A stretch of DNA of 64,000 bases from Paraphysomonas bandaiensis (lineage: Eukaryota; Protista; Chrysophyceae). Both the position numbers and the translations under genes were made by a program. The stretch lies in assembly GCA_965644295.1 (NCBI GenBank), contig CBFFRP010000363.1, positions 496,001-560,000 of the forward strand, written 5' to 3'. Positions 7,888 to 58,000 of this stretch are shown here, piece by piece. Numbering within the stretch: position 1 is the stretch's first letter; every line of letters starts with the position of its first letter. The notes under the pieces are model-generated. The model was not told the origin of the DNA, did no database searches, and saw nothing but the letters and a program-made list of their open reading frames with translations.

Positions 7888-8912
7888 TAAATCGTTGGTA
7901 ATCAGCACTCAGGCTCACACTTATAGTAATGTTTTTGTTTGTGATGAAATGTGAATAGTGCCCAATTCCAAGGGCGTGCCGTAGTAAAGTACTAGTGTTC
8001 ATTAAGCTAAGCAACGTATAGATTGTTAATAAAATCTCAGCGTATTTTTTGTATGTCGGCGCCAAGCAAGCTCTAGATCTACACTACACTTGCATATTGC
8101 ATAGCCTATATGAGATTAACTACGAGAAACAACGCGCATTTTAGGGGAGGAGGGGGGGGGCGGCCAATACCACGCTAGGCCTATACTGATTCATGTATTG
8201 TCAGGAGAAGATTCGCGAGTTCTTTGTTAGGTAATGGGAAGGTAAACATGGTCCTACTAGAATCTGCGCGAACTACATACAACATATATAGGTCATGTGC
8301 AGCTATGGAAATCCCGCGTAATCTTAGCGAAGTGTGAACACGGGCGGGGCAGCAACAGAACCTGCGCGTGATCTATGCGGTCAGCTACGTTGGTACACGG
8401 GTAGGCGGTGGTAGAATAAGCACATAATCTCGATGCTATGTGTGGTGTACCAGCGAGCCTACACTATGACCACGCATTCGGAATGGGGCAGTTTTAATAT
8501 GGTACTTTTTATCAAGCTTCTTTCTCCCTGATATTTAATTTGTGATGAAACCAATATATAAAGAAGTCCTTATTCAAACTCAACTTCTTAATCTATTGCG
8601 CTCAACTCTTTTTCTCTATAATTCATTGAGTATACACAGAATTTAAATAGAATTATTGAAATGTAGGTAAATTTCGTTGACGTATTTTGCTGTAGCTACT
8701 ACATACACATGCATGCGTTTGCTGCAAATTAACGACAAATCTTGATATATGCTAAATTTCACCTAATCTTATAGTTCATTACAGTACACCATCTAGTTCT
8801 CATTATTGCTTGCGCATGTAACAGAAAAGCAATAACTGTACCCCAATGAATGAACTGATTATTACTCAACAGACCAATAGTACTCCAGCTACACACTCTA
8901 CTACTCTAGTCT

Positions 8913-9384
8913 CTAGTACCAATACTTATTACCTGACACTAGCCGGGAGTCTCTGGAGCTTAAAGCCATTTCTGATACATTATTTCTCTTTTTACCACGA
9001 CTGAGAGCATTGCTCAGTAAGTCGAGCATATCCACTACCTCACCTGCATGGTCTTCTTTTTCCATTTCAAACACGGTTTCATGCTGTAAATCAGCACATG
9101 AATCAACGACGTACTCGGACTGAACTTTCACTGCGCATTTCAAATGCTTTTCTCCCCTCCAATACTAATAGGCATACTGCTTGCTTGCGTCGTCTTCAAT
9201 AACCTCGAGACATACACTCTCCGCTTTTCTACAGGTCACGGGAACCCACTTGTCACGCTCATTTTGTCGATAATGAGGCATAAACCTTCACAATAGCTCT
9301 CCCGCATAGTGATGAAGCTTGCAATACGAACTCACAGTTAATAATGGCACGATTCACAGTGTATTCGCTCTCTCAAATTCCTTC
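8913..9384 (-). pseudogene. Degenerate coding fragment inside the tandem unit (repeated in all 4 copies)
   Basis: One minus-strand frame reads as protein-like (KEFERANTL*IVPLL...ELL*RFMPHYRQNERDKWVPVTC...YAY*YWRGEKHLKCAVKV...) with isolated TGA/TAG stops. Family unknown, possibly transposon-derived. Confidence 0.4.
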
Positions 9385-9545
9385 TGTGGGAATAAGTCGA
9401 TCCAGCGGAATATGTCGATCCAGCAAAAAAATCGACCTTTTTTCGTTATTTCTCTGAAATATATTCGTCAAAAAACAGCATGCATCAAAAAAACCTGGAT
9501 TTTTTTGCTGGATCGACATATTCTGCTGGATCTTATATTCCCACA
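9385..9545. mobile_element. 161-bp MITE-like element inside the tandem unit (also 11322-11482, 13259-13419, 15196-15356)
   Basis: ~48-bp imperfect TIRs TGTGGGAATA...GTCGATCCAGC / GCTGGATCGAC...TATTCCCACA with repeated GATCCAGC motifs. No clear TSD. Confidence 0.75.
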
Positions 9546-10497
9546 CACAGAATTGTTGCCTTATTGGAATTCCAAGACATCACTATCTAAGTGCGTGGCA
9601 TTCGCTACTTCAAAATTGAAGTTGCGGTTTCTGCAGCACGACATCAAGATTTCAGCTGGATGATGGTATCTTGTTCCCTCAAACCATCCCTATCTGCTTC
9701 TTGGAGTTCCAAAACGCTGTTCACATACCAGTGCCTGCCCATACTTCAATGTTCTGTTCGACGTCACACTTTAGTCAGCCGCATTTGCGATTACTACACA
9801 ATCACAACTTCACTGCAATCAAGTCAGAGTTATCATCACGACTAAGATTCGTGTCCTCACAGTGAGTGTTGCCTGGAGTGACACTTCTTTATTGGCATGC
9901 TCCATTTCTGATTGGCTTCTGCGGTATATTTTTTTGGACAAGACGATGAAAAACGACGCTTTTGTTCTCGTTAGCGCGAAGGGCATCCCAGTAGAGCTCA
10001 TAGAACTCCCATCCATACACTCGTATCCAGAATATACTCCAGAGCGCAAGTAAAACTCCCTTGCCTGACAATCCTGGAGTTTTACTTGCGCTCTGGAGCT
10101 TGAGGAAGATTTTACTCCCTTGCCTGACGATCCTGCAGAGTGTTCGATCATGGAAGACCGCAGTCCTGATCCCTTCTATCAGACATTGCATGCTCTTACT
10201 TGTCCAGATACACTGGATGAAATGATTCGTTACTAATATTCGCCGCAAGGGAATGGATACTTTAAACGAGCAGCAGCATGTGGCAGCTCGAACAGCCGAA
10301 CTGGAGACATCACGGTATCATGACCAGCTCACTGAAACCAATTCATTTCCGTCGGCTGACTTAACACTGCTTCCTGCATCGTTTGTTTCTACTTATTTAG
10401 TAATATTTTTTGCTATCTGTTCCTTAGTCTTAGTTTGTTTCATTTTTACCATTAACTAACATTCGATACAACGTAACTTTTACTTACATAACCTTTC

Positions 10498-10637
10498 GAC
10501 ACTTAGTAACACTTACTTCTATTCACACTTAGTAACAACTTAGTAACACTTACTTCTATTCACACTTAGTAACAACTTAGTAACACTTACTTAGTAACAC
10601 TTACTTCTATTCACACTTAGTAACAACTTAGTAACAC
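10498..10637. repeat. ACTTAGTAAC / ACTTACTTCTATTCAC minisatellite at the end of each tandem unit
   Basis: Directly visible. It recurs at +1937 and +3874, and as a duplicated block at ~18860-19133. Confidence 0.9.
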
Positions 10638-13600
10638 CATATTACATGCATGCGTTTGCTGCAAATTAACGACAAATCTTGATATATGCTAAATTTCACC
10701 TAATCTTATAGTTCATTACAGTACACCATCTAGTTCTCATTATTGCTTGCGCATGTAACAGAAAAGCAATAACTGTACCCCAATGAATGAACTGATTATT
10801 ACTCAACAGACCAATAGTACTCCAGCTACACACTCTACTACTCTAGTCTCTAGTACCAATACTTATTACCTGACACTAGCCGGGAGTCTCTGGAGCTTAA
10901 AGCCATTTCTGATACATTATTTCTCTTTTTACCACGACTGAGAGCATTGCTCAGTAAGTCGAGCATATCCACTACCTCACCTGCATGGTCTTCTTTTTCC
11001 ATTTCAAACACGGTTTCATGCTGTAAATCAGCACATGAATCAACGACGTACTCGGACTGAACTTTCACTGCGCATTTCAAATGCTTTTCTCCCCTCCAAT
11101 ACTAATAGGCATACTGCTTGCTTGCGTCGTCTTCAATAACCTCGAGACATACACTCTCCGCTTTTCTACAGGTCACGGGAACCCACTTGTCACGCTCATT
11201 TTGTCGATAATGAGGCATAAACCTTCACAATAGCTCTCCCGCATAGTGATGAAGCTTGCAATACGAACTCACAGTTAATAATGGCACGATTCACAGTGTA
11301 TTCGCTCTCTCAAATTCCTTCTGTGGGAATAAGTCGATCCAGCGGAATATGTCGATCCAGCAAAAAAATCGACCTTTTTTCGTTATTTCTCTGAAATATA
11401 TTCGTCAAAAAACAGCATGCATCAAAAAAACCTGGATTTTTTTGCTGGATCGACATATTCTGCTGGATCTTATATTCCCACACACAGAATTGTTGCCTTA
11501 TTGGAATTCCAAGACATCACTATCTAAGTGCGTGGCATTCGCTACTTCAAAATTGAAGTTGCGGTTTCTGCAGCACGACATCAAGATTTCAGCTGGATGA
11601 TGGTATCTTGTTCCCTCAAACCATCCCTATCTGCTTCTTGGAGTTCCAAAACGCTGTTCACATACCAGTGCCTGCCCATACTTCAATGTTCTGTTCGACG
11701 TCACACTTTAGTCAGCCGCATTTGCGATTACTACACAATCACAACTTCACTGCAATCAAGTCAGAGTTATCATCACGACTAAGATTCGTGTCCTCACAGT
11801 GAGTGTTGCCTGGAGTGACACTTCTTTATTGGCATGCTCCATTTCTGATTGGCTTCTGCGGTATATTTTTTTGGACAAGACGATGAAAAACGACGCTTTT
11901 GTTCTCGTTAGCGCGAAGGGCATCCCAGTAGAGCTCATAGAACTCCCATCCATACACTCGTATCCAGAATATACTCCAGAGCGCAAGTAAAACTCCCTTG
12001 CCTGACAATCCTGGAGTTTTACTTGCGCTCTGGAGCTTGAGGAAGATTTTACTCCCTTGCCTGACGATCCTGCAGAGTGTTCGATCATGGAAGACCGCAG
12101 TCCTGATCCCTTCTATCAGACATTGCATGCTCTTACTTGTCCAGATACACTGGATGAAATGATTCGTTACTAATATTCGCCGCAAGGGAATGGATACTTT
12201 AAACGAGCAGCAGCATGTGGCAGCTCGAACAGCCGAACTGGAGACATCACGGTATCATGACCAGCTCACTGAAACCAATTCATTTCCGTCGGCTGACTTA
12301 ACACTGCTTCCTGCATCGTTTGTTTCTACTTATTTAGTAATATTTTTTGCTATCTGTTCCTTAGTCTTAGTTTGTTTCATTTTTACCATTAACTAACATT
12401 CGATACAACGTAACTTTTACTTACATAACCTTTCGACACTTAGTAACACTTACTTCTATTCACACTTAGTAACAACTTAGTAACACTTACTTCTATTCAC
12501 ACTTAGTAACAACTTAGTAACACTTACTTAGTAACACTTACTTCTATTCACACTTAGTAACAACTTAGTAACACCATATTACATGCATGCGTTTGCTGCA
12601 AATTAACGACAAATCTTGATATATGCTAAATTTCACCTAATCTTATAGTTCATTACAGTACACCATCTAGTTCTCATTATTGCTTGCGCATGTAACAGAA
12701 AAGCAATAACTGTACCCCAATGAATGAACTGATTATTACTCAACAGACCAATAGTACTCCAGCTACACACTCTACTACTCTAGTCTCTAGTACCAATACT
12801 TATTACCTGACACTAGCCGGGAGTCTCTGGAGCTTAAAGCCATTTCTGATACATTATTTCTCTTTTTACCACGACTGAGAGCATTGCTCAGTAAGTCGAG
12901 CATATCCACTACCTCACCTGCATGGTCTTCTTTTTCCATTTCAAACACGGTTTCATGCTGTAAATCAGCACATGAATCAACGACGTACTCGGACTGAACT
13001 TTCACTGCGCATTTCAAATGCTTTTCTCCCCTCCAATACTAATAGGCATACTGCTTGCTTGCGTCGTCTTCAATAACCTCGAGACATACACTCTCCGCTT
13101 TTCTACAGGTCACGGGAACCCACTTGTCACGCTCATTTTGTCGATAATGAGGCATAAACCTTCACAATAGCTCTCCCGCATAGTGATGAAGCTTGCAATA
13201 CGAACTCACAGTTAATAATGGCACGATTCACAGTGTATTCGCTCTCTCAAATTCCTTCTGTGGGAATAAGTCGATCCAGCGGAATATGTCGATCCAGCAA
13301 AAAAATCGACCTTTTTTCGTTATTTCTCTGAAATATATTCGTCAAAAAACAGCATGCATCAAAAAAACCTGGATTTTTTTGCTGGATCGACATATTCTGC
13401 TGGATCTTATATTCCCACACACAGAATTGTTGCCTTATTGGAATTCCAAGACATCACTATCTAAGTGCGTGGCATTCGCTACTTCAAAATTGAAGTTGCG
13501 GTTTCTGCAGCACGACATCAAGATTTCAGCTGGATGATGGTATCTTGTTCCCTCAAACCATCCCTATCTGCTTCTTGGAGTTCCAAAACGCTGTTCACAT

Positions 13601-16280
13601 ACCAGTGCCTGCCCATACTTCAATGTTCTGTTCGACGTCACACTTTAGTCAGCCGCATTTGCGATTACTACACAATCACAACTTCACTGCAATCAAGTCA
13701 GAGTTATCATCACGACTAAGATTCGTGTCCTCACAGTGAGTGTTGCCTGGAGTGACACTTCTTTATTGGCATGCTCCATTTCTGATTGGCTTCTGCGGTA
13801 TATTTTTTTGGACAAGACGATGAAAAACGACGCTTTTGTTCTCGTTAGCGCGAAGGGCATCCCAGTAGAGCTCATAGAACTCCCATCCATACACTCGTAT
13901 CCAGAATATACTCCAGAGCGCAAGTAAAACTCCCTTGCCTGACAATCCTGGAGTTTTACTTGCGCTCTGGAGCTTGAGGAAGATTTTACTCCCTTGCCTG
14001 ACGATCCTGCAGAGTGTTCGATCATGGAAGACCGCAGTCCTGATCCCTTCTATCAGACATTGCATGCTCTTACTTGTCCAGATACACTGGATGAAATGAT
14101 TCGTTACTAATATTCGCCGCAAGGGAATGGATACTTTAAACGAGCAGCAGCATGTGGCAGCTCGAACAGCCGAACTGGAGACATCACGGTATCATGACCA
14201 GCTCACTGAAACCAATTCATTTCCGTCGGCTGACTTAACACTGCTTCCTGCATCGTTTGTTTCTACTTATTTAGTAATATTTTTTGCTATCTGTTCCTTA
14301 GTCTTAGTTTGTTTCATTTTTACCATTAACTAACATTCGATACAACGTAACTTTTACTTACATAACCTTTCGACACTTAGTAACACTTACTTCTATTCAC
14401 ACTTAGTAACAACTTAGTAACACTTACTTCTATTCACACTTAGTAACAACTTAGTAACACTTACTTAGTAACACTTACTTCTATTCACACTTAGTAACAA
14501 CTTAGTAACACCATATTACATGCATGCGTTTGCTGCAAATTAACGACAAATCTTGATATATGCTAAATTTCACCTAATCTTATAGTTCATTACAGTACAC
14601 CATCTAGTTCTCATTATTGCTTGCGCATGTAACAGAAAAGCAATAACTGTACCCCAATGAATGAACTGATTATTACTCAACAGACCAATAGTACTCCAGC
14701 TACACACTCTACTACTCTAGTCTCTAGTACCAATACTTATTACCTGACACTAGCCGGGAGTCTCTGGAGCTTAAAGCCATTTCTGATACATTATTTCTCT
14801 TTTTACCACGACTGAGAGCATTGCTCAGTAAGTCGAGCATATCCACTACCTCACCTGCATGGTCTTCTTTTTCCATTTCAAACACGGTTTCATGCTGTAA
14901 ATCAGCACATGAATCAACGACGTACTCGGACTGAACTTTCACTGCGCATTTCAAATGCTTTTCTCCCCTCCAATACTAATAGGCATACTGCTTGCTTGCG
15001 TCGTCTTCAATAACCTCGAGACATACACTCTCCGCTTTTCTACAGGTCACGGGAACCCACTTGTCACGCTCATTTTGTCGATAATGAGGCATAAACCTTC
15101 ACAATAGCTCTCCCGCATAGTGATGAAGCTTGCAATACGAACTCACAGTTAATAATGGCACGATTCACAGTGTATTCGCTCTCTCAAATTCCTTCTGTGG
15201 GAATAAGTCGATCCAGCGGAATATGTCGATCCAGCAAAAAAATCGACCTTTTTTCGTTATTTCTCTGAAATATATTCGTCAAAAAACAGCATGCATCAAA
15301 AAAACCTGGATTTTTTTGCTGGATCGACATATTCTGCTGGATCTTATATTCCCACACACAGAATTGTTGCCTTATTGGAATTCCAAGACATCACTATCTA
15401 AGTGCGTGGCATTCGCTACTTCAAAATTGAAGTTGCGGTTTCTGCAGCACGACATCAAGATTTCAGCTGGATGATGGTATCTTGTTCCCTCAAACCATCC
15501 CTATCTGCTTCTTGGAGTTCCAAAACGCTGTTCACATACCAGTGCCTGCCCATACTTCAATGTTCTGTTCGACGTCACACTTTAGTCAGCCGCATTTGCG
15601 ATTACTACACAATCACAACTTCACTGCAATCAAGTCAGAGTTATCATCACGACTAAGATTCGTGTCCTCACAGTGAGTGTTGCCTGGAGTGACACTTCTT
15701 TATTGGCATGCTCCATTTCTGATTGGCTTCTGCGGTATATTTTTTTGGACAAGACGATGAAAAACGACGCTTTTGTTCTCGTTAGCGCGAAGGGCATCCC
15801 AGTAGAGCTCATAGAACTCCCATCCATACACTCGTATCCAGAATATACTCCAGAGCGCAAGTAAAACTCCCTTGCCTGACAATCCTGGAGTTTTACTTGC
15901 GCTCTGGAGCTTGAGGAAGATTTTACTCCCTTGCCTGACGATCCTGCAGAGTGTTCGATCATGGAAGACCGCAGTCCTGATCCCTTCTATCAGACATTGC
16001 ATGCTCTTACTTGTCCAGATACACTGGATGAAATGATTCGTTACTAATATTCGCCGCAAGGGAATGGATACTTTAAACGAGCAGCAGCATGTGGCAGCTC
16101 GAACAGCCGAACTGGAGACATCACGGTATCATGACCAGCTCACTGAAACCAATTCATTTCCGTCGGCTGACTTAACACTGCTTCCTGCATCGTTTGTTTC
16201 TACTTATTTAGTAATATTTTTTGCTATCTGTTCCTTAGTCTTAGTTTGTTTCATTTTTACCATTAACTAACATTCGATAC

Positions 16281-18841
16281 GATAAGGTTTTTTTGCGGCC
16301 CGCCAGGGCCCTCGGCCCTCGCGGGCCCGCGGCCCCCCGCGGGCCCTCTAAAATTAATTTTTTTCAGTTTTTGCCTCCTGAAGATTTTGATTTGTTATAT
16401 TATTTCAGTTATTGTCTTTTAAAGATTTCGAGTTTTGAAAAAACTAATGTGATTAGTTTTTAATTTCGACTTTTTGAAAACTTAATACAAATTCATTAAT
16501 AATTTTGTCATCAAGCAGGCGATTAATAATGCATGATTCTAATTCAGAAGAATCAGGGAGAAAAGATAGTTGTAATAGCGATGATCTCCCTACAACTTTT
16601 CAGTGGGAAGGTTTCAGATACACTATCAAGCAGAGGAAGAGGCTTCAAGATGGTTCGGTATAATATATTCTCTATCAGTAAGCCACTGATCCATATATTT
16701 AGGAAATTTGAAGGGTTATTATCGGTGCTCAAAACACCGGAAAGGAAGAACATGTGGCTGTCCAGCTAAATTGACAATTCTTGTTCACGAGCAAGCAGAA
16801 GAATCTGATGAAAAACTGATAATTTCAAAGGGGAAAGAGGAGCACAAATGTGGTGCCGCCATCTTTATATTGCCTTCAGATTCACCAACATCTGATGATA
16901 ATTCCAAGGAGAGGTCGTCGTTTTGTAAAGGTGTATATGACGCAAGTGGTGAAATGAAACAACTTTGTGAAGCAATGGCGTTGAAAGATGTTTCGAAGTC
17001 CTCCATTGCGATTGCAAATGAAGTTGCGGAAACAACGCGAGCGAAATATAAGCAGCTCGGTGAGAAAATTGATATTTTTTTCTTTTTGCTGTTTTCACTT
17101 CATTTTCTTTTGCTTATTTCGGTAGGAATGCCATATAGATATCTCGAAACGTCGAAACTCAAAGCTTTGGTGTATCAGTGTAGACGTTTAGAGTTCAATG
17201 ATTGGGAAGGAATTATATCGTCGTATCCGCTTGTGAACTGTGCTGATGACGACGAGAGACTATTTTTACAGTTCAATACTTCAATCAATGTTAGCAATCA
17301 GATGCAGAAGATAATTGGCTTTGCACATCCTGATTTAATCAATATTGTAAAGGGTGGTCCGGTCCATCTGTTTATAGACTGTACTTTTAAATGTGTGCCA
17401 AAGGGATTTTCTCAGTGTCTAGTAATTATGATATATGACTACGCCTCGTCCCTATACATTCCTGTATTTTATATATTGCTGCAATCGAAGTTTGAAGAAG
17501 TGTATTCCATGGCTCTTTATTTGAGTAAGGCCTCAACAGATTTCATGATGGAGATCATCAATGGCTCAGTGGATTTCGAGAAGGGTCTGATGAATGCTAT
17601 CAAACGGAACTTTGAGGGCAAGCCTGTAACTGGATGCGCGTTTCACTGGAAGCAAGCAATCCGTAGGAAATTGTTCAGCCTGGGTATTCCCGATGAGGTG
17701 ATTACGCCATTGATGAATAAAACTGGTCTCATCAACATTCTATTAACAATTCCTATTGAAGATATTGAGCCTAAAGGGATACCATATGTGCGCCAACATT
17801 TTGACGAAGGTGTTCACCGAGCCAAGTTTGACATATTCTGGAAATACTTCGTGAAGACCTGGATGCTCTCGTACGATCCTAATGATTGGAATGTGCATGG
17901 CATTGTAACAGACGAGTCATCAACATCCCGCTTGATTAATAGAACCAACAATCCACTGGAAAGGTTTAACAGAAAGCTGAACGAGGCTTTTCCCACTGCG
18001 CATCCTTCCGTGGTGTTATATGTGAGTACTATTCGGAAGCTAAGTCAAGAATACGTCGAACTTCGAAACAAAATTCTCAGGGGTCATGCATCCCGGCCGA
18101 AACATCTGCCATTCCAGCAATTCACATTGCCAGAGGACTACGCTGCATTTGAAATGGACAGGTCAGTCCAAAGGACTAAGTTTGCGCAGCTCAACCAATA
18201 CAAGTTTTTGATTGGGAAGAGCCACTATGATCCTGAGGATGGGTGCATGTACGAGGTGGTGAGAGTTGGATTTTACGAGGGGTCCATCGTTGGCTATCGC
18301 GAGCAGTGCCGACTGCAGAATGGATATGTTGTCGATGTACCCACTGATGATTGTATTTCAATTGAGGAGATAGTGAAATACACTGGATGTGGCAAGGAGT
18401 CTACAGTGACAGCCGAAGACTGTGCTTTCACCGAGGAGATTGAGACATGCTGTGTTGCCGCCGGCAGGGCTCAGACCGGCGCCAAACGCCGGAATAGGGC
18501 CGGTGGGGCCGGCCCCGGCGTTGTTTAGGGGCGGGGGCCTGGGGGCAGTGGACGCCGGCTCGTAGAGTCGAAGCGTGGGGAGCCCCCAGCTCCGAAAAAT
18601 GTTTTGGTATAAAGTTGCTCTTGCTTAAGATATTAATAACTCTTGCTAAATTTGACCCTTTGCTTTGTGCGTAATACTGCCCTTTGCTTTGTGCGTTATT
18701 GTTGCTTGTGGTTGTAGTGTGTGTTGTGTGTGTTTTTAATTAAGAATTATTGTTATTATTGTTAGTTGTAGTAGAGGGCCAAATGCGGGCCGAGGGCCCT
18801 AGCGGGCCGAGGGCCAAAAAGGGCCAAAATTAAATTTTTCC
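16281..18841 (+). mobile_element. Mutator-like (MULE) DNA transposon, copy 1, 2,561 bp
   Basis: 8-bp TSD TTCGATAC (16273-16280 / 18842-18849); the uninterrupted site is present in tandem copies 1-3. Imperfect termini are built of GGCCC arrays. Encodes a MULE transposase. Confidence 0.97.
16529..18528 (+). CDS. MULE DDE transposase with an N-terminal FLYWCH/WRKY-like zinc finger and a C-terminal module shared with the Copia integrase
   Basis: Predicted exons 16529-16652, 16703-17059 and 17126-18528 (GT-AG introns of 50 and 66 nt). Motifs: WEGFRY...YYRCSKHR...CPAKL...HKC; FIDCTFK; VDFEKGLMNAI; GCAFHWKQAI (CxxH); RTNNPLERFNRKLN. Confidence 0.95.
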
Positions 18842-19377
18842 TTCGATACAACGTAACTTTTACTTACATAACCTTTCGACACTTAGTAACACTTACTTCT
18901 ATTCACACTTAGTAACAACTTAGTAACACTTACTTAGTAACACTTACTTCTATTCACACTTAGTAACAACTTAGTAACACCATATTTATATATATTTACT
19001 TACATAACCTTTCGACACTTAGTAACACTTACTTCTATTCACACTTAGTAACAACTTAGTAACACTTACTTAGTAACACTTACTTCTATTCACACTTAGT
19101 AACAACTTAGTAACACCATATTTATATATATTTACATGCATATGTAGTGAAGTATACAGATTAATAATTATAATATTGCAGTACTAAGTCTACGCTAGAT
19201 TCCCAGCAGCAGTATTGCAATACTTTTCTAACCGATTCAACAATACGATTGCAACAGTATATTGCTTCCTATTCCTGACAGATACAACATACACCGATAC
19301 TACAAAATATTAATATCATATAATGTCCACACGATCTACTATTCAAATGTAAGCATACCGGATACCGGCCATACTAC

Positions 19378-21938
19378 GGAAAAATTTAATTTTGGCCCTT
19401 TTTGGCCCTCGGCCCGCTAGGGCCCTCGGCCCGCATTTGGCCCTCTACTACAACTAACAATAATAACAATAATTCTTAATTAAAAACACACACAACACAC
19501 ACTACAACCACAAGCAACAATAACGCACAAAGCAAAGGGCAGTATTACGCACAAAGCAAAGGGTCAAATTTAGCAAGAGTTATTAATATCTTAAGCAAGA
19601 GCAACTTTATACCAAAACATTTTTCGGAGCTGGGGGCTCCCCACGCTTCGACTCTACGAGCCGGCGTCCACTGCCCCCAGGCCCCCGCCCCTAAACAACG
19701 CCGGGGCCGGCCCCACCGGCCCTATTCCGGCGTTTGGCGCCGGTCTGAGCCCTGCCGGCGGCAACACAGCATGTCTCAATCTCCTCGGTGAAAGCACAGT
19801 CTTCGGCTGTCACTGTAGACTCCTTGCCACATCCAGTGTATTTCACTATCTCCTCAATTGAAATACAATCATCAGTGGGTACATCGACAACATATCCATT
19901 CTGCAGTCGGCACTGCTCGCGATAGCCAACGATGGACCCCTCGTAAAATCCAACTCTCACCACCTCGTACATGCACCCATCCTCAGGATCATAGTGGCTC
20001 TTCCCAATCAAAAACTTGTATTGGTTGAGCTGCGCAAACTTAGTCCTTTGGACTGACCTGTCCATTTCAAATGCAGCGTAGTCCTCTGGCAATGTGAATT
20101 GCTGGAATGGCAGATGTTTCGGCCGGGATGCATGACCCCTGAGAATTTTGTTTCGAAGTTCGACGTATTCTTGACTTAGCTTCCGAATAGTACTCACATA
20201 TAACACCACGGAAGGATGCGCAGTGGGAAAAGCCTCGTTCAGCTTTCTGTTAAACCTTTCCAGTGGATTGTTGGTTCTATTAATCAAGCGGGATGTTGAT
20301 GACTCGTCTGTTACAATGCCATGCACATTCCAATCATTAGGATCGTACGAGAGCATCCAGGTCTTCACGAAGTATTTCCAGAATATGTCAAACTTGGCTC
20401 GGTGAACACCTTCGTCAAAATGTTGGCGCACATATGGTATCCCTTTAGGCTCAATATCTTCAATAGGAATTGTTAATAGAATGTTGATGAGACCAGTTTT
20501 ATTCATCAATGGCGTAATCACCTCATCGGGAATACCCAGGCTGAACAATTTCCTACGGATTGCTTGCTTCCAGTGAAACGCGCATCCAGTTACAGGCTTG
20601 CCCTCAAAGTTCCGTTTGATAGCATTCATCAGACCCTTCTCGAAATCCACTGAGCCATTGATGATCTCCATCATGAAATCTGTTGAGGCCTTACTCAAAT
20701 AAAGAGCCATGGAATACACTTCTTCAAACTTCGATTGCAGCAATATATAAAATACAGGAATGTATAGGGACGAGGCGTAGTCATATATCATAATTACTAG
20801 ACACTGAGAAAATCCCTTTGGCACACATTTAAAAGTACAGTCTATAAACAGATGGACCGGACCACCCTTTACAATATTGATTAAATCAGGATGTGCAAAG
20901 CCAATTATCTTCTGCATCTGATTGCTAACATTGATTGAAGTATTGAACTGTAAAAATAGTCTCTCGTCGTCATCAGCACAGTTCACAAGCGGATACGACG
21001 ATATAATTCCTTCCCAATCATTGAACTCTAAACGTCTACACTGATACACCAAAGCTTTGAGTTTCGACGTTTCGAGATATCTATATGGCATTCCTACCGA
21101 AATAAGCAAAAGAAAATGAAGTGAAAACAGCAAAAAGAAAAAAATATCAATTTTCTCACCGAGCTGCTTATATTTCGCTCGCGTTGTTTCCGCAACTTCA
21201 TTTGCAATCGCAATGGAGGACTTCGAAACATCTTTCAACGCCATTGCTTCACAAAGTTGTTTCATTTCACCACTTGCGTCATATACACCTTTACAAAACG
21301 ACGACCTCTCCTTGGAATTATCATCAGATGTTGGTGAATCTGAAGGCAATATAAAGATGGCGGCACCACATTTGTGCTCCTCTTTCCCCTTTGAAATTAT
21401 CAGTTTTTCATCAGATTCTTCTGCTTGCTCGTGAACAAGAATTGTCAATTTAGCTGGACAGCCACATGTTCTTCCTTTCCGGTGTTTTGAGCACCGATAA
21501 TAACCCTTCAAATTTCCTAAATATATGGATCAGTGGCTTACTGATAGAGAATATATTATACCGAACCATCTTGAAGCCTCTTCCTCTGCTTGATAGTGTA
21601 TCTGAAACCTTCCCACTGAAAAGTTGTAGGGAGATCATCGCTATTACAACTATCTTTTCTCCCTGATTCTTCTGAATTAGAATCATGCATTATTAATCGC
21701 CTGCTTGATGACAAAATTATTAATGAATTTGTATTAAGTTTTCAAAAAGTCGAAATTAAAAACTAATCACATTAGTTTTTTCAAAACTCGAAATCTTTAA
21801 AAGACAATAACTGAAATAATATAACAAATCAAAATCTTCAGGAGGCAAAAACTGAAAAAAATTAATTTTAGAGGGCCCGCGGGGGGCCGCGGGCCCGCGA
21901 GGGCCGAGGGCCCTGGCGGGCCGCAAAAAAACCTTATC
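19378..21938 (-). mobile_element. MULE copy 2, inverted, 2,561 bp
   Basis: Reverse complement of copy 1 with an identical translated ORF. It has its own 8-bp TSD CATACTAC (19370-19377 / 21939-21946). Confidence 0.97.
19691..21690 (-). CDS. MULE DDE transposase, copy 2
   Basis: 606-aa ORF identical to copy 1; exon structure mirrors copy 1. Confidence 0.95.
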
Positions 21939-50759: not shown

Positions 50760-51052
50760 TAACAGAAGTTGACATTATTTGCTAAGGTTTACTATTCTCA
50801 ACTGATAAGATGAAATTATAAACATTACATGATAAAGAACCTAAGTTGTGTTCGATGTGTTCAACACCATTCATTTACTACTATAGTCTACAAACCACAC
50901 ACTCAGTGATCGTATCCTGTATAGTCACCCACTTCTACTTCAGTTTCATACTACACAATATAATGTACTAATTACATATATATCTTTCGATCCTTGCATC
51001 TCACATAATACTGCACTCAATTGCAAGTATATAGAATCTTCAGATCTCAACA
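50760..51052 (-). repeat. 3' LTR of the Copia element
   Basis: Matches 54615-54907 by eye except the terminal base. Reads TGTTG...CTGTTA on the element strand. Confidence 0.97.
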
Positions 51053-51177
51053 CTCCCCCTCAATTGAGTGTTGTACTATGACGCCTCCCAGCTATTGAAT
51101 GCCTGAGATAAAAAAAATTCTTGACAGTAAAATAGACTCATCTCTAAGTCTAAACCTCTGTCTAAAAAACTCAGTAC

Positions 51178-51600
51178 CTACTTGCGTCTTCTTTTATCCC
51201 TTGGTCCCTCATTAATCACTTCAGTGGAACTCTTAATTTTCTCTCCAAGATTTCTCTTTCTCTGCTCCACATATGATAAACCAACCAATGACTTTGTATA
51301 AATATCTGCTGCTTGTTGCGATGTATGCACATGCACTAACTTAATCGTATTGAACTGATTGGGATCCACGTGCTCTCTCACCATGTGATACTTAATCTCA
51401 ATGTGCTTCGACTTCTTGTGAAACACTGGGTTTTCGGCCAAATCCTGGGCACTCTGACTGTCGATGAAGAATGGTGTGGGTTTGATGAGCCTCAACTTAA
51501 TCTCACCCGTCACCCCCCGAACCCATAGCACTTCTTGGAGACCCGAGTAAATACACTGATACTCAGACTGCATGCTTGACGTTGCCACTGTCGTCTGCAG
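51178..51600 (-). pseudogene. Copia RNase H domain, out of frame after the RT deletion
   Basis: LQTTVATSSMQSEY...FFIDSQSAQDLAENPVFHKKSKHIEIKYHMVRE...QQAADIYTKSL. Confidence 0.92.
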
Positions 51601-51762
51601 TGCTCCACTCCCTGTGCTCGGCACTCTCCAAGGACTCACGATGTGTCTGAGGCACTTTCGACTCTTCCGCTGACATCCACACTGAGTCTGCCTCCTGTAA
51701 AAGGTCACTCACATCACTCTCATCACTCAAATGATGGATTTGTCCTAACACCGACACATTCG

Positions 51763-54630
51763 TTACCGTCCTTGGAGTTCTTGCGCGTTTGCCGTGCGGA
51801 TGATTCTCGGCAGGGGTCCCTTCCCCCGAAGGTAATGCTGAGTCAGCCTGGGGCTGCACCTGCCCACTTTCCGACTGCTGTGGCACCACTCTCCGCTGAT
51901 ACCGCCGTCACGGTTGTCAGTAACTCTGGCCCTAACCACCCTCTGCGCAAGATCCTCTGTCATCTTCTTGATGTCAGCAATATGAATAGGAGTTTTATCC
52001 TCCACTTGAACCTGGTTACCAGTAACCAACGACCGGTATCCCACAATAAGTCCCTTCCTTATCACCACTCTGTTAGTCTTGTATAGCAGACCACCATCCT
52101 CATGGTGCTTTCCGATAAGATACTCAAACTCACCCGGTTGACGAGCCTCGGGATCTATAGCCACTTGAGCCTCCTCCAGCTCTCTATAATAATCCTGAGA
52201 CCTCTCAGGTACCGATTCATCAAATAATACATGTACAGAGTGTACTACGGTGTCCCCCACTAGCACCTTGTATCCTTTTCGATCAGCTGGATACCCTATG
52301 AAATAACCTGTCATTGCTTTGTCCTCCCAGTCCTTCCTCCTGTCGGCCTTGGGTGTTAGCACATATGCTTTGCACCCCCATTTCCGTAGCCACGATAGGC
52401 TGGGAACGCTCCCCCCTGGGACACACTCATATGGAGACATCCATCCTTGCCACGTCCGAGTTGGCATTCGTCGCACAATGTAACATGCAGTTTGATAAGC
52501 ATCAAACCAGAACGACTTTGGAAGTCCAGATGCCGTCAACATCGTCAGTGTCATCTCCCCAATTGTTCGGAATTTCCTCTCAGACACCGCGTTGAGCTCT
52601 GGCGTGTCTCGTGTTGTATGTGACACCCGAGTCCCATATCGCTGCAACAGATACTCTCTTATCTGCTGACTAATAAGTTCGGATCCTCCATCGGCATGAT
52701 ACTCCACTATACGGTTCCACCCCTCGTACTTCACTAAGTGGACCTCGCACAAGTGTCGTAGACATTTGAACACCTCCTCTCCGCTTCGAGTCCTCAATCC
52801 ATATTCCCATATCATCTTTGTTGCTAAGTCCGTAAATAGGAGCACGTACTTATACCCTTGTCTGGATTCACAATTGAGGTAGACTGAGATGTCCGCTGTC
52901 ACTCTTTCCAGAAACCTGACTGCGCTTAGCTCTTCGTTGTCCCGTGATTTGAACGAATGCCTGGTTATCTTCGCCTTGGCACACCATTTACACAGGGGTT
53001 TCTTGCAACTCTTCTCCTTTGCCTTCGAAAGGTGATGTCGTTGTAGTCTTGATCCTCTGAATAACATGTGTCGGTGAGCTTCTATTAACTTCGATTTCGA
53101 GACATGTCCAGTACGCTCATGTAAGCGATCCAACGCATCTTGTCCTGTATTATCCGACAAATTTACCTCCTCCATCTGATTGCACATAGACACATTTGGC
53201 AGATTTAACACCTCCATCAAGTCCACATACGGCATTCCTCCATGCTCATCGTACTCTCCAGTCAACACCTCGTTTCCAGAGTCCAATTCCACGATTTTAG
53301 GCTTTCGAAGCAGTTGTAATCCGTATCCCATTGATCTCAGCATTCCTCCTGACACAATGTTCTTCACCGCTTCTTCACTAACTCTGATGTCTCTCCATTC
53401 CCCGAATGTACCACTTCCCTGTGTCTCCAATTGAGAACCCTTTCTAGTTAGTTGGATTGCCCCAAACTCAGGAGTAAATGACTCCAGTGCAACTTTATCC
53501 TTTACTATAAACAGTCTTTTACTTGCACAACTGTCCAGATATACACGAGGTTCTTCCGACGTATCCACCGATAGCAAAACCTCTTCTCCAAACATATTCG
53601 CTTCATCATCCGACGACTCTCCGTCGTTGACGTATTTCTTCCATTCTGTCTCGAATTTCCTGTTCGATTTTCCAGGATTCTCATTATCCGGGTTTTTTAT
53701 GTTCTTCCGTTTTTTCGACTTGCACTGTCGGGCTTTGTGACTAAAATCTTCACAGATATGACAACCAGTATAATCCTTTGACCCTGGCTGCTGCACACTC
53801 TTCGAAGTGTTTTCCTTTGTCTTCCCTTTTCTTTTAAACTTATCCATTTTTCTTTGTCGTTCCTTAGCATAACAATTCGCTGCTACATGTCCCTTCTTCC
53901 GACAAAATGAACAAACCACTGGCTCCTTCGACGCTGTAAAATTGATCTCTTCAGACTTGTCTCCCTTTAGTTTCTTCAGCTGCGTCATAGCCTCGTCATA
54001 CTCTTCACAAGCCTCTTTCACCGAATCAAATGTAGTTGTTGCTTTAGGCATCATCGCTACCGACATCCATAAATCATGTAATTCCTCTATCTGCAGCGCT
54101 GCTTTTATCTTTGCTAATTTACTTGCCTCTGTCTGCGGTTGTCCCAATTTTATGAGCTTCTGGATTATACCGTTCAGTCGATCTACCCCAACAGACACCT
54201 TTTCCCCCGGCCTTATTTTGAACGAATGGTATTCTGCCGTAGTCTTCTCCAATACAGTCCCAATCTCGCCTCTGAACCTATCAACCAGTGTCTGAAGGAG
54301 CTCACTGGATAACACCTCCTTAGCAGGATCATCAGCAGGTAAAATTGCCTTCCCCTCCAAATATTGATTGGCTACCTCCAACACATCAGGGTCATGCTCG
54401 CAAGCCTCCCAAATAGTACTAACACAGGTATCATTACGCTCTCTCCATGACTCTAAATTCCTTCCTCCGGCTGGCGGGTCCTCCAAGCCAAGATGGTTTC
54501 GGTTTTTCTTCATTAGATGCATCTTGATTTTTCTCGCTGAATAGTCTGCTTGGTTCTTGTCAAACCGTAGCTTCTTGTCATCTTCCCCATCCCTACAACT
54601 AGCATTCGCTACCACAACAGAAGTTGACAT
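51763..54630 (-). CDS. Copia gag-protease-integrase polyprotein; frameshift near 51900, true continuation in ORF 51563-51889
   Basis: Two CCHC knuckles (CSFCRKKGHVAANC, CHICEDFSHKARQC); protease YLDSCAS; HHCC (LHERTGH...CKWC); DDE (TADI, HADGGSE, NAVSER); SH3-like CKAYV...GYFIGY. Confidence 0.93.
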   Translation of the reverse strand: MSTSVVVANASCRDGEDDKKLRFDKNQADYSARKIKMHLMKKNRNHLGLEDPPAGGRNLESWRERNDTCVSTIWEACEHDPDVLEVANQYLEGKAILPADDPAKEVLSSELLQTLVDRFRGEIGTVLEKTTAEYHSFKIRPGEKVSVGVDRLNGIIQKLIKLGQPQTEASKLAKIKAALQIEELHDLWMSVAMMPKATTTFDSVKEACEEYDEAMTQLKKLKGDKSEEINFTASKEPVVCSFCRKKGHVAANCYAKERQRKMDKFKRKGKTKENTSKSVQQPGSKDYTGCHICEDFSHKARQCKSKKRKNIKNPDNENPGKSNRKFETEWKKYVNDGESSDDEANMFGEEVLLSVDTSEEPRVYLDSCASKRLFIVKDKVALESFTPEFGAIQLTRKGSQLETQGSGTFGEWRDIRVSEEAVKNIVSGGMLRSMGYGLQLLRKPKIVELDSGNEVLTGEYDEHGGMPYVDLMEVLNLPNVSMCNQMEEVNLSDNTGQDALDRLHERTGHVSKSKLIEAHRHMLFRGSRLQRHHLSKAKEKSCKKPLCKWCAKAKITRHSFKSRDNEELSAVRFLERVTADISVYLNCESRQGYKYVLLFTDLATKMIWEYGLRTRSGEEVFKCLRHLCEVHLVKYEGWNRIVEYHADGGSELISQQIREYLLQRYGTRVSHTTRDTPELNAVSERKFRTIGEMTLTMLTASGLPKSFWFDAYQTACYIVRRMPTRTWQGWMSPYECVPGGSVPSLSWLRKWGCKAYVLTPKADRRKDWEDKAMTGYFIGYPADRKGYKVLVGDTVVHSVHVLFDESVPERSQDYYRELEEAQVAIDPEARQPGEFEYLIGKHHEDGGLLYKTNRVVIRKGLIVGYRSLVTGNQVQVEDKTPIHIADIKKMTEDLAQRVVRARVTDNRDGGISGEWCHSSRKVGRCSPRLTQHYLRGKGPLPRIIRTANAQELQGR
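54597..54614 (-). promoter_or_regulatory. Primer-binding site, initiator tRNA-Met-like
   Basis: TGGTAGCGAATGCTAGTT immediately follows the 5' LTR. Its complement AACTAGCATTCGCTACCA fits tRNA positions 59-76 with A60, C61, U72, A73 and CCA, which are eukaryotic initiator features. Confidence 0.8.
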
Positions 54631-54907
54631 TATTTGCTAAGGTTTACTATTCTCAACTGATAAGATGAAATTATAAACATTACATGATAAAGAACCTAAG
54701 TTGTGTTCGATGTGTTCAACACCATTCATTTACTACTATAGTCTACAAACCACACACTCAGTGATCGTATCCTGTATAGTCACCCACTTCTACTTCAGTT
54801 TCATACTACACAATATAATGTACTAATTACATATATATCTTTCGATCCTTGCATCTCACATAATACTGCACTCAATTGCAAGTATATAGAATCTTCAGAT
54901 CTCAACA
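54615..54907 (-). repeat. 5' LTR of the Copia element
   Basis: Direct repeat of 50760-51052. It contains the gag ATG at 54630. Confidence 0.97.
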
Positions 54908-55068: not shown

Positions 55069-58000
55069 CTATATAATATCCTCATAAAAAGTTGAAGATT
55101 TTGTCAGACTACGATGTAGTTTAGATGGACTCCTTTCACCCCTTCTTCTTAACACTTTCAACAGTACAAAGGAGTCACGGTCGCGTACAATAAGCTCTAA
55201 AATATCTTCACAAAATAGCCCCTCTACCTTAACTCCATTCACTTCAAGAATTTCATCGCCGACGCGAAGAATATTCTGCTTTGCAACGTTGCTGGAGACG
55301 TCAATATCAGATATTATAAAACGGTTGACTTTTCTCGATGGCGACTGCATAAATTGAACCATGAGTGAATTGTTCGTCTTGGGAACTAACGTCTCAAACA
55401 TGACATGGCGGCGCTTCATCTCTCTGATCACCTTCACATGGGACCTCGCATTACCACTGGAGTGCCTCGCATTTCTTCTCATTCGCATATTAGATGCGGA
55501 ACAGGGTTTTCCAACAAGCAAGAAATTCTCACTGCAACTACCGGTCAACATCCCCACGTTGTCAGAGTTCATTGGCACCTCCATAGCATGGTCCAGCTCA
55601 GACTGATGGGTAGACTCTTCAATAATTCGCAAGAACTCGCTATCAGTGTACAGCTTGCTAAGCATGGGGGACAGACCGACGGATTCATTTCGAACACTGC
55701 TCCCTCGGTCAGCACTGTCAAATGTAGACTCAAAGAGGGAGCTATTAATAAGCTTTTGCTGCTGCATAAACCCATTAAAATCAGCGGCTAGATTCTCAAT
55801 GAAGCTGATATCCTCGTACACAGTATCATCTAAGTCCTCACGGAATGATACCCGCCTCAAATCCCCGTATTCCTTCGACACCAAGGAGTCCTGTATTCGC
55901 ATCACAGGACTGGGAAGTCCAATAGATGAACTGAAATTCCTCACAACCTCATCTAAATCAGTTCCCACATCATTCCTATCCGGTATGATGGCTTCTGCTG
56001 TAGACAGCGTATGCTCTTTACTTTGGTCTTGTGACGAGGCGGGTTTAGAAAAAAAACTTTTGTCTACATTACCATCGTAAGAAGATTCATAGGATACAAG
56101 TGCAGTTGCACTGCCGTTTTCCACGAGCAGTGAGTTTCTATTGGTGTCTACTTCTCTTACTGCTGTCAGTGTTTCCTGTCGTACTATATCTGTGTTTACT
56201 TCTCCTACTGCTGTTGGAGTGGTCAGCAGATGACAAGCATGAATTCGGGATGATATTTCCTTTGTGACAGCTGTTAAAGCAACACTCGTGTACAAAGATG
56301 AAAGGGCGAGCGCATAACTCGTTGCCACAGAACAGTGCACCTTTCGCCTGTAGAGAGTGGCGCACAATACTACGGCACTGTCAAGAGAAAAATGGAGTGC
56401 AGAGTATACCACACGCCGCGCCATTGTACACGCCGCATCATAAGATGAAAGTATCGTATTCTTACGACAAGCAACTTGTGCACTGCGCACTCGCCCCACA
56501 AAGCAGGATTGATCTATTACTTTCGCCACTCCACTTTGAATCAAATGCCCCACATAGCGCGCAGTCAACTTCTGACGAACTTGCCTCGGATTGCGATGTA
56601 GACCGCATAAAAACGTAGCTGCAGAAACAATCGCACCTTCACACGTGCTCAATGCAATTCTGTTCCGAACAACTTCATGTGAACCCTTTCTCGATACAGT
56701 TTTGAGAGCAGCAGATATTACTTGACTGCAAAACTTGCTGGACATTGCGCTGCATATCAAGCAAAATTCTATTCTGTCACTGAATGATAAACTACTCAGC
56801 TTTGACAATGCACGAGCCACTTCGTCGTTGGCTTCATTTATGTCAGAGATAGGGAAACGCCGATCTTGCAGTGACATACATGCAATATTCACGAAGCTCT
56901 CTTTCGTATCAGTAGTATATTCTTGCCTATTCACAGCAGGCGACTTCACAGCAACATCTATTTCCTCTTTTTCAGGCCGAACAGGTAACTCCATGGGAGG
57001 GATACGACTTTCAGGTGTAGTAACGTAGGGTTCACTGGCGAGGATGCCATTCAATAAGGGCTCCGGCGTCGTTTTAGTGCAATCTATTTTATCTTTTGTA
57101 TTCACAGGGGCATCTGTATCTCTTTCGCTTAAGCTGTCGCTCCTTTCGGGTTCTGAATCCATCTTTGCAGAAGAATTTACATTTTTGCTCTTTGCAATAG
57201 AAGTTTCGTGGCTGACATCGTGTTTGTCGCATCGGACGATTGTAGAATTCTTTACTGGCCGCGGGGCCGAGTTCAATCTAAAAGTACCGGACATATTATG
57301 AGTGAGGGCAGACTGCGCTAAGTCGTCCAGTCTACTGTCTCTCACTACAGCTTGTACAGGTGAAATATTGGCAGGGTTCCCAAATATACGCCTTCCCCTG
57401 TACGACGGTGCTACAAGAGGGGGTGGAACAATCAAATTGTCAGTACTACTGTCGAATTTTCTTCTCAGGTCATTGCATACAGAGGAGGCAGGGGCCGTTC
57501 GAGAAAACATAAGCTCACTATCAGTGCGTGTATCCATTTCAGGGAATAGAGCACCAAGTCCACTGTCCATATGCCTAATTAGTTTAACACCAGTACCACT
57601 TGTTGGGGTATCCGATTTACGATGCAACTGCACATCCGGGAATACTTCTGCAGATTCAATTTTCCTAGTACCACGCCCGCATTTAGTCAAAATTCTGGAA
57701 TATCCAGTGGGAGTGAGCGCAGAAGTGGCAGGCGACTCTATATCTGGAAATAGCATATCAAAATCACCTTCACTGTAGTTTACTTCAGTGTCCTCATTGA
57801 AAGTTTGCTTCTGAAGGTTTGGATTCAATATCCCATCACTATCACAAGCAACCCTATCACCACCATTCAATGAAACGGACATATCGACATCCGGAGAACA
57901 GTCAAACATTACGGTTCCAGTTTTTTCGCAAGTACTACCAAGCTGACGCGGTGATTCCTTAAAACCATAACCACAAGAACGCCAGGAAGTTCTCATCCTA

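What the first reader, a model, noticed from the sequence alone, without database searches (positions are those of the whole stretch)
18199..18384. A ~60-aa C-terminal module shared by a MULE DNA transposase and a Copia integrase
Seen: after its catalytic core the MULE transposase has YKFLIGKSHYDPEDGCMYEVVRVGFYEGSIVGYREQCRLQNGYVVDVPTDDCISIEEIVKYT. After its SH3-like domain the Copia integrase (51958-52128, minus strand) has FEYLIGKHHEDGGLLYKTNRVVIRKGLIVGYRSLVTGNQVQVEDKTPIHIADIKKMT. Conserved in order: LIGKxH, EDG, Y, RV, GxIVGYR, IxIx[ED]IxKxT. Known: integrase C-termini carry targeting modules (chromovirus chromodomains, the Ty5 Sir4-binding motif, the Ty1 AC40-binding region). I do not recognise this motif from canonical MULE or Copia proteins. 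Inference: this is a small beta-rich module ending in a helix (chromo/Tudor/SH3-like pattern) that has moved between class I and class II elements. It may steer both to the same chromatin, which would fit their co-occurrence in this window.
Basis: partly seen in the sequence, partly recalled or inferred. Interest (0 to 1): 0.9.

Follow-up and report, generated by a model that had tools for sequence, protein, structure and literature searches.

The report
Undescribed barrel domain shared by Copia and MULE
A roughly 65-residue folded domain with no Pfam or solved-structure match sits after the DNA-cutting core of both a retrotransposon integrase (Copia) and a cut-and-paste transposase (MULE) in a marine protist, is conserved in many relatives of each, and probably helps both enzymes choose where to insert, though that role is untested.

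Summary
Both peptides are at the stated coordinates. They align at 39% identity (BLASTP E 2e-8; z = 14.9 against 20,000 shuffles). Profiles built separately from Copia and from MULE copies match at hhalign probability 98.6%, E 1e-15.

It is not a one-off. In public data, every classifiable carrier of 200 aa or more is a Copia polyprotein, with the module between the integrase SH3-like domain and RT. At least seven Copia families of this genome carry it. About 20 MULE transposases (40-53% identical) carry it directly after the catalytic core, whereas more distant relatives, including Phytophthora ones, end before it.

On a tree the MULE copies sit on one side of a single branch (SH-aLRT 97). 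That fits one old exchange, but the direction is not resolved.

AlphaFold gives both versions the same helix, four strands, helix small barrel (pLDDT 85 and 94). The barrel resembles SH3, Tudor, chromo-barrel and KOW folds only generically (Z 5-6). No Pfam family or PDB sequence matches.

The MULE has TIRs, 8-bp TSDs and at least 27 independent insertions. Contigs that lack both introns still contain the module.

A targeting role is inferred, not shown. First-stage notes elsewhere in this genome already flagged the Copia module, and none was followed up.

The parts
18181..18396 (+). Shared module in MULE copy 1. It is aa 519-580 of the spliced 627-aa transposase.
19823..20038 (-). The same module in the identical, inverted MULE copy 2 (core 19835-20020).
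16281..18841 (+). MULE element copy 1, 2561 bp. Imperfect ~63-nt TIRs (16288-16350 / 18772-18834). 8-bp TSD TTCGATAC.
19378..21938 (-). MULE element copy 2, 100% identical to copy 1, with its own 8-bp TSD CATACTAC. It is therefore an independent insertion.
16529..18528 (+). MULE transposase gene. Exons 16529-16652, 16703-17059 and 17126-18528. GT..AG introns 16653-16702 and 17060-17125. Product 627 aa: N-terminal FLYWCH/WRKY-like Cys/His finger, MULE core, then the module.
51946..52146 (-).
52207..52413 (-). Integrase SH3-like domain (PF25597, aa 740-808, E 2e-17), about 22 residues upstream of the module. It shows no detectable relation to the module.
52609..52905 (-). Integrase catalytic core (PF00665 rve, aa 576-674, E 2e-7; 31.6 bits, just under Pfam's cut-off of 32.6).
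50761..54907 (-). Copia element, 4147 bp, with identical 292-bp LTRs (50761-51052 and 54616-54907). It is a deletion derivative that lacks most of RT, compared with the 1532-aa full-length polyprotein P0001.

Best explanation
The segment is a self-contained domain of about 65 residues: an N-terminal helix, a four-stranded SH3-like small beta-barrel, then a C-terminal helix. It belongs to a sequence family that is not yet described.

It is a standing part of the integrase C-terminal region in a broad clade of Ty1/Copia elements of marine microbial eukaryotes, where it lies after the SH3-like domain and before RT. It is also a standing part of one clade of MULE transposases, directly after the DDE core. 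These points are shown here.

The two sets are homologous and separate as one split on a tree. This fits a single old exchange between the two element classes, or one common source (partly shown; direction unknown).

Inferred, not shown: the domain is an accessory arm of the DDE recombinase that tethers the integration or transposition complex to a feature of the target. That feature could be a histone or nucleosome surface, or a chromatin-bound host protein, and the tether would bias where insertions land. Chromodomains do this for chromoviruses, and the Ty1 and Ty5 integrase C-termini do it for those elements.
For: Homology:
- Pairwise E 2e-8 and shuffle z = 14.9.
- Copia-only against MULE-only profiles: hhalign probability 98.6%, E 1.2e-15.

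Domain-hood and same fold:
- AF2 models have pLDDT 85.4 (MULE, 7-sequence alignment) and 94.4 (Copia, 60-sequence alignment), with the same H-E-E-E-E-H order.
- Both models give nearly the same list of structural neighbours.

Constraint in Copia:
- 290 cluster representatives at E <= 1e-3 among 1.84 billion proteins.
- All but one of the 49 hits of 200 aa or more align to the Copia polyprotein. About 40 of them extend into integrase and/or RT, with polyprotein identity as low as 26%.
- The architecture gag_pre-integrs, SH3_retrovirus, module, RVT_2 is confirmed for P0125.
- In this genome, RVT_2 lies about 0.8 kb downstream in the same ORF.

Constraint in MULE:
- 18 relatives at 40-53% identity keep the module at the same place.
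- Mean pairwise identity is 0.39 in the module, 0.32 in the linker and 0.17 in the tail.
- More distant relatives, including Phytophthora ones, stop at query residue ~481.

One split between the MULE and Copia modules, SH-aLRT 97.

The module is in the product:
- Contigs of three runs lack both GT..AG introns and run through the module to 18752.
- The spliced ORF is 627 aa and restores an N-terminal Cys/His finger.

Recent activity: at least 27 insertions at 98-100% identity with different flanks.

For a targeting role (circumstantial only):
- The position after the catalytic core is where known integrase targeting modules sit (established knowledge; PMC12477816 and bioRxiv 10.1101/2021.11.30.470311).
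- A module-less MULE relative, P0217, carries a zf-CW domain at its C-terminus (PF07496, E 4.6e-13). zf-CW is a known H3K4me reader type.
Against: - No binding partner or insertion bias was tested.
- Structural matches are weak (best Z 5.9-6.0) and do not favour Tudor or chromo folds over CAP-Gly, VapX, R67 DHFR or KOW barrels.
- No clear aromatic cage can be read from the sequence. The best-conserved positions shared by both sets are L10, H15, an acidic D/E-D loop, Y22, I34-V35, R38 and I54. An invariant arginine and an acidic loop fit a protein or DNA interface as well as a methyl-lysine pocket.
- The RNA status of the runs with the spliced form is the tool's guess, and one run is flagged 'probably DNA'.
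- Only the best 150 of the 290 hits were visible, and MULE-type modules score too low with the Copia-dominated profile to be found. Other carriers (host proteins, other superfamilies) cannot be excluded.
Confidence: 0.6

Rival explanations
1. The domain is not a chromatin or host-factor tether. It is instead a nucleic-acid-binding or multimerisation arm of the recombinase, holding element ends or target DNA or helping the intasome or transpososome assemble, as the SH3-like C-terminal domain of retroviral integrases does.
For: The fold is a generic SH3-like barrel whose neighbours include KOW, Sm and PWWP-with-ssDNA structures. An invariant Arg and several conserved basic positions are present. 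Several MULE relatives add further nucleic-acid-type zinc knuckles right after it. It is kept in the internally deleted MULE copies of this genome.
Against: Copia integrases already have an SH3-like domain just upstream, and the module shows no relation to it (hhalign probability below 10%). Many MULE relatives and most Copia of other eukaryotes work without the module. It is therefore dispensable for catalysis, as accessory targeting modules are.
Confidence: 0.28
2. The MULE merely picked up a fragment of a Copia gene, as Pack-MULEs pick up host fragments. The segment has no function in the transposase.
For: MULEs are known to capture foreign DNA (established knowledge). The module lies at the C-terminal end, where an addition is tolerated.
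Against: It is in frame and kept in about 20 MULE relatives from different samples at 40-53% overall identity. The same key residues are retained, and conservation is higher than in the flanking linker and tail. The MULE modules form their own deep clade. There is no nucleotide-level trace of a recent capture.
Confidence: 0.03
3. The module arose as a tandem duplicate of the integrase SH3-like C-terminal domain. This is a statement about origin, not function.
For: Same general fold class, and the two domains are adjacent, about 22 residues apart.
Against: Profile-profile comparison of the module with the SH3_retrovirus region of the same proteins gives probability 0.7% (Copia profile) and 9% (MULE profile).
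Confidence: 0.07
4. The similarity is due to chance or composition.
For: The segments are short.
Against: 0 of 20,000 shuffles reach the score. The independent profiles match at E 1e-15. The predicted folds are the same.
Confidence: 0.01

Closest known systems
Chromodomains at the integrase C-terminus of chromoviruses (Ty3/Gypsy; e.g. MAGGY, Tf1)
   Same: A small beta-rich domain ending in a helix, appended after the integrase core of an LTR element. For chromodomains it is shown to direct integration (Gao et al. 2008, as cited).
   Different: No sequence match to the Pfam chromo family. The host elements are Copia and MULE, not Gypsy. It is a four-stranded barrel with an extra N-terminal helix. 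Ligand unknown.
Tudor domain of Ectocarpus Gypsy-10_Ec32 (PMC12477816)
   Same: A small barrel at the end of Pol/integrase in a stramenopile TE, interpreted as a chromatin reader. That paper argues for repeated acquisitions of reader domains in stramenopile TEs.
   Different: That domain is recognisable as Tudor by standard tools. This one matches no family, and it occurs in Copia and in a DNA transposon.
Ty1 integrase AC40-binding region and Ty5 integrase Sir4-binding motif
   Same: The C-terminal region of a Ty1/Copia integrase used as a tether to a host protein (established knowledge).
   Different: Those are short linear motifs in disordered tails. This is a folded, widely conserved domain.
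Transposase-reader fusions in DNA transposons (hAT + Chromo in a sponge and other cases, bioRxiv 10.1101/2021.11.30.470311; zf-CW at the C-terminus of MULE relative P0217)
   Same: A DDE transposase carrying a chromatin-reader-type domain. P0217 shows this in the same MULE lineage and at the same end of the protein.
   Different: Those fusions use known Pfam domains and are mostly lineage-restricted. Here one unnamed domain is shared with a retrotransposon superfamily.
Integrase SH3-like C-terminal domain (PF25597 SH3_retrovirus; the 'GKGY' region of Pseudoviridae integrases)
   Same: Same fold class, and it sits next to the module in the same protein.
   Different: No detectable sequence or profile relation. 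The module is an additional, second barrel.

Membership tests
Chromodomain / chromo-barrel | Sequence match to a chromo family profile | tested here: not met
   No Pfam hit for either module at E <= 1, nor for any of 60 members at E <= 10. No PDB sequence hit with E below 0.1.
Chromodomain / chromo-barrel | Fold: beta-sheet or barrel packed against a C-terminal helix | tested here: inconclusive
   MRG15 chromo-barrel Z 4.9-5.0, RBBP1 Z 4.5-5.0. These are no better than unrelated small barrels.
Chromodomain / Tudor 'royal family' readers | Aromatic cage for methyl-lysine or methyl-arginine | not testable with these tools
By sequence, the shared aromatics are F/Y7, Y/F/W9 and Y22, with H15 also shared and Y37 replaced by His in MULEs. 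This is not decisive.
Tudor | Sequence match to a Tudor profile, or clear structural similarity | tested here: inconclusive
   No Pfam hit. ERCC6L2 Tudor Z 5.0, 53BP1 Z 4.8-5.0, SMN Z 4.3-4.4.
SH3_retrovirus (PF25597) | Profile similarity to the integrase SH3-like domain | tested here: not met
   hhalign probability 0.7% and 9%.
MULE (Mutator-like) DNA transposon, for the carrier at 16281-18841 | MULE-type DDE core | tested here: met
   PF10551 scores E 0.002, below the cut-off, in this copy. However, 81 homologues were found, many with PF10551 on record, including Phytophthora proteins annotated as MULE.
MULE (Mutator-like) DNA transposon, for the carrier at 16281-18841 | Terminal inverted repeats and 8-11-bp target-site duplication | tested here: met
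   ~63-nt imperfect TIRs. 8-bp TSDs TTCGATAC and CATACTAC.
Ty1/Copia LTR retrotransposon, for the carrier at 50761-54907 | LTRs, and the domain order gag, protease, integrase, then RT (RVT_2) | tested here: met
   Identical 292-bp LTRs. Weak gag hit, rve (just under its cut-off) and a strong SH3_retrovirus hit. The full-length relative P0001 carries rve, SH3_retrovirus and RVT_2. The window copy has lost most of RT.

The most novel reading that the evidence does not exclude
This is a new family of target-tethering (chromatin-reader or host-factor-binding) domain. It has been exchanged between an LTR retrotransposon superfamily and a cut-and-paste DNA transposon superfamily, and it gives both the same insertion niche in the genomes of marine protists.
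Probability: 0.3. Interest if true: 0.8.

Novelty: new variant of a known kind. Interest (0 to 1): 0.62.

Why it matters
How transposons choose insertion sites is known for only a few model elements. For Copia it is known only from yeast linear motifs, and for MULEs the mechanism is unknown.

A folded, conserved and so far unnamed domain, shared by a Copia clade and a MULE clade, offers one defined handle on both. One binding assay, or one comparison of insertion sites, could show whether class I and class II elements reuse the same targeting device.

The finding also adds a domain family that current databases lack. That is probably because its carriers are uncultured marine protists.

Tried and rejected
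- **Pfam and PDB:** Pfam on both modules and on 60 members, and a PDB sequence profile search, found nothing.
- **Structure searches:** Foldseek against PDB and BFVD, VIA-align wide, and the ESM Atlas by shape gave only generic small-barrel matches: E >= 0.01, Z <= 6, TM 0.5-0.7 to unrelated bacterial or phage proteins.
- **ESM Atlas by features:** no usable hit.
- **Duplication of the SH3-like domain:** not supported.
- **Shared segment extending upstream:** an 'IP..DY' motif sits about 12-17 residues before the module in both proteins. It aligns only at low confidence, so it is a lead and not a result.
- **Other carriers:**
  - The search for homologous proteins on the Copia module region gave only 7 close Copia proteins. 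The same search on the MULE module region gave none.
With a close alignment it gave 5 Copia contigs.
  - No host protein or third TE superfamily was found, but the searches were too shallow to exclude one.
- **RNA genes as possible targets:** Rfam and tRNA scans of the window found none.
- **Not attempted:** a test of genomic co-location of MULE and Copia copies, because contig lengths are unknown and the hit lists are capped.
- **Not run:** Complex prediction, because no binding claim is made.

Full report
**Observation.**
- The first lies near the end of a 606-codon open frame, 16708-18528(+). An identical inverted twin lies at 19691-21511(-).
- The second lies in a 955-codon frame, 51763-54630(-).
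- BLASTP of the two C-terminal regions gives 37.4 bits, E 2e-8, 26/66 identities.
- The local alignment score of 82 compares with 21.6 ± 4.05 (maximum 51) for 20,000 shuffles, z = 14.9. When the whole proteins are compared, the best local alignment is the same segment.

**The carriers.**

*MULE.*
- The plus-strand protein has a weak MULE-domain hit (PF10551, E 0.002) and a Cys/His finger at its start.
- It has 81 homologues, many with PF10551 on record, including Phytophthora proteins annotated as MULE.
- The element is 16281-18841 (2561 bp), with imperfect ~63-nt terminal inverted repeats.
- A 100% identical copy lies inverted at 19378-21938, 536 bp away.
- Each copy has its own 8-bp target-site duplication, TTCGATAC and CATACTAC, so they are two separate insertions.
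- Contigs from three public runs of a closely related organism lack two short GT..AG segments (50 and 66 nt). They run on through the module to 18752.
- Removing these introns gives a 627-aa protein from the ATG at 16529. Its N-terminus completes a FLYWCH/WRKY-like finger, and the module is at residues 519-580.
- The tool only guesses that these runs are RNA and flags one as probably DNA. Expression is therefore likely but not proven.
- The genome holds at least 27 insertions of this family at 98-100% identity, all with different 3' flanks. They fall into three size classes: full length, and two internal deletions that keep the module.

*Copia.*
- The minus-strand protein has a weak gag hit, an rve integrase core (E 2e-7, just under Pfam's cut-off) and a strong SH3_retrovirus domain at residues 740-808.
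- The module follows at residues 830-891.
- The element is 50761-54907 with identical 292-bp LTRs. Compared with a 1532-aa full-length polyprotein (P0001, 97% identical) it has lost most of RT.

**Is the module general?** Yes.

*In this genome.*
- The Copia query finds 67 copies at 100% identity, plus families at 75, 60, 57 and 54%.
- The MULE query also picks up two further families, with 1651-aa and 1681-aa ORFs, at about 31-33% identity.
- RVT_2 lies about 0.8 kb downstream in the same frames, so these two families are Copia as well.

*In public data.*
- A profile of seven modules was searched against 1.84 billion cluster representatives. It finds 290 proteins at E <= 1e-3.
- Of the 49 listed hits of 200 aa or more, all but one low-complexity false positive align to the Copia polyprotein.
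- About 40 of them extend into integrase and/or RT, with identity as low as 26%.
- None aligns to the MULE core.
- One such protein (P0125) has gag_pre-integrs, SH3_retrovirus and RVT_2 on record, with the module between the last two.
- Where sources are recorded they are marine or other metagenomes and one MMETSP transcript.

*Among the 81 MULE homologues.*
- About 20 of the closest (40-53% identity) carry the module at the same place.
- More distant ones, including all named Phytophthora proteins, end at query residue ~481.
- Across 18 module-bearing relatives, mean pairwise identity is 0.53-0.59 in the core, 0.39 in the module, 0.32 in the linker and 0.17 in the tail.

The module is therefore under constraint in both lineages. 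It is not a passively captured fragment.

**Relationship of the two sets.**
- Profiles built only from Copia modules and only from MULE modules match at hhalign probability 98.6%, E 1.2e-15.
- In a maximum-likelihood tree of 104 modules, the 13 MULE modules sit on one side of a single branch (SH-aLRT 97).
- This fits one old exchange or one common source. The tree is unrooted and no outgroup is known, so the direction is open.
- Short fragments labelled 'Copia' in that tree were not all individually classified.
- The adjacent SH3-like domain is not detectably related to the module (probability 0.7% and 9%).
- An upstream 'IP..DY' motif occurs at similar spacing in both proteins but aligns only at low confidence.

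**Fold.**
- AlphaFold2 gives the MULE module pLDDT 85.4 and the Copia module, with a 60-sequence alignment, pLDDT 94.4 and pTM 0.80.
- Both have the same order: helix, four strands, helix.
- Both give almost the same structural neighbours at Z 4.5-6.0. These are VapX, the Bik1 CAP-Gly domain, R67 dihydrofolate reductase, KOW domains, the ERCC6L2 and 53BP1 Tudor domains, the MRG15 and RBBP1 chromo-barrels, and PWWP and BAH domains.
- Foldseek finds nothing below E 0.01 in PDB or BFVD.
- By the tool's own calibration, such scores show only a common small-barrel arrangement.
Membership of any one of those families is not shown.
- No Pfam family and no PDB sequence matches.

**Residues shared by both sets** (numbered on the 67-residue Copia segment, aa 829-895):
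- F/Y7, Y/F/W9 and L10 in the first helix
- G12 and H15
- an acidic D/E-D loop (17-18)
- Y22
- I34, V35 and R38 (R38 is invariant in MULEs and 96% in Copia)
- I54, D/E58, M/Y62 and T63

This pattern is compatible with a binding pocket, but it does not identify a methyl-lysine cage.

**Mechanism.** What is shown is a conserved accessory domain placed right after the DDE core in two unrelated recombinase families. It is dispensable for catalysis, since many relatives lack it.

I infer that it tethers the integration or transposition complex to a feature of the target. Two points favour this:
- That is what the known modules at this position do: chromodomains of chromoviruses, the Ty1 and Ty5 integrase C-termini, and the Tudor domain reported in an Ectocarpus Gypsy element (PMC12477816). 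TE-reader fusions are surveyed in bioRxiv 10.1101/2021.11.30.470311.
- A module-less relative of this MULE (P0217) carries a zf-CW finger at its C-terminus (E 4.6e-13). zf-CW is a known H3K4me-reader type.

The main rival is a DNA-binding or assembly role, which the generic barrel and the conserved arginine fit equally well.

No insertion-site comparison could be made. MULE 3' flanks are all different, with GC mostly 0.28-0.40 against roughly 0.42 for the window. Copia flanks could not be fetched. Co-occurrence in this window carries no weight, given the density of Copia copies.

**Novelty.** TEs that carry small reader-type barrels are known, including in stramenopiles. DNA transposases fused to reader domains are also known. 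What I did not find described:
- the domain family itself
- a folded, conserved module in Copia integrase tails
- one such module shared between Copia and MULE

I searched five paper queries and read three papers, in part, for relevant passages. First-stage notes on other pieces of this genome had already flagged the Copia module, and one claims it in a Gypsy Pol. None was followed up, and I could not check the Gypsy claim.

I rate it a new variant of a known kind, of clear interest to transposon biologists, with its function still open.

Noticed in passing
window 8707-16280: A 1937-bp unit repeated in tandem about 3.9 times at 100% identity. The array ends exactly where MULE copy 1 begins (16280/16281). 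No Rfam family, tRNA or clear coding frame was found in it. In three of the four runs laid, contig depth over 16100-16293 is roughly 10-30 times that over the MULE, so the unit is highly repeated or highly expressed.
   Followed up: partly
window 16281-21938: The two identical MULE copies lie tail to tail, 536 bp apart, and form a 5.66-kb near-perfect palindrome. Different TSDs show two separate insertions rather than a duplication. Similar inverted pairs appear on other contigs (C288, C192, C86).
   Followed up: partly
loci L001-L030 (own genome): The MULE family has two recurrent internal-deletion forms, lacking element nt 1356-1593 or 245-1456. Each is present at several independent sites, and both keep the 3' part of the gene including the module.
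   Followed up: partly
window 55069-61701 (-): A 2210-codon open frame with PDZ domains near both ends. Between 58238 and 59933 it contains an internal array of 105-bp repeats at 88-95% identity.
   Followed up: no
proteins P0158, P0159, P0160, P0161, P0163, P0164 (MULE relatives): After the module these relatives carry a further Cys-rich segment (motif RVHC.C.K...C.A....ASP.AK.YPNA.YW.C.K). P0158, P0159, P0163 and P0164 end in a Cys/His knuckle motif, which Pfam scores as zf-CCHC only below its cut-off in P0163 and P0164. The C-terminal tail of this MULE clade therefore accumulates accessory domains.
   Followed up: partly
protein P0217 (MULE relative, 789 aa): Carries a zf-CW domain (PF07496, E 4.6e-13) at residues 743-787 and no shared module. 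A histone-reader type thus sits at the same end of a related transposase.
   Followed up: partly
own genome, e.g. C169:5615-6301, C281:389039-389725: An abundant Copia family with a 1507-aa ORF (about 45 RVT_2 hits) does not appear in either capped list of module hits. It may be a module-less comparison family.
   Followed up: no
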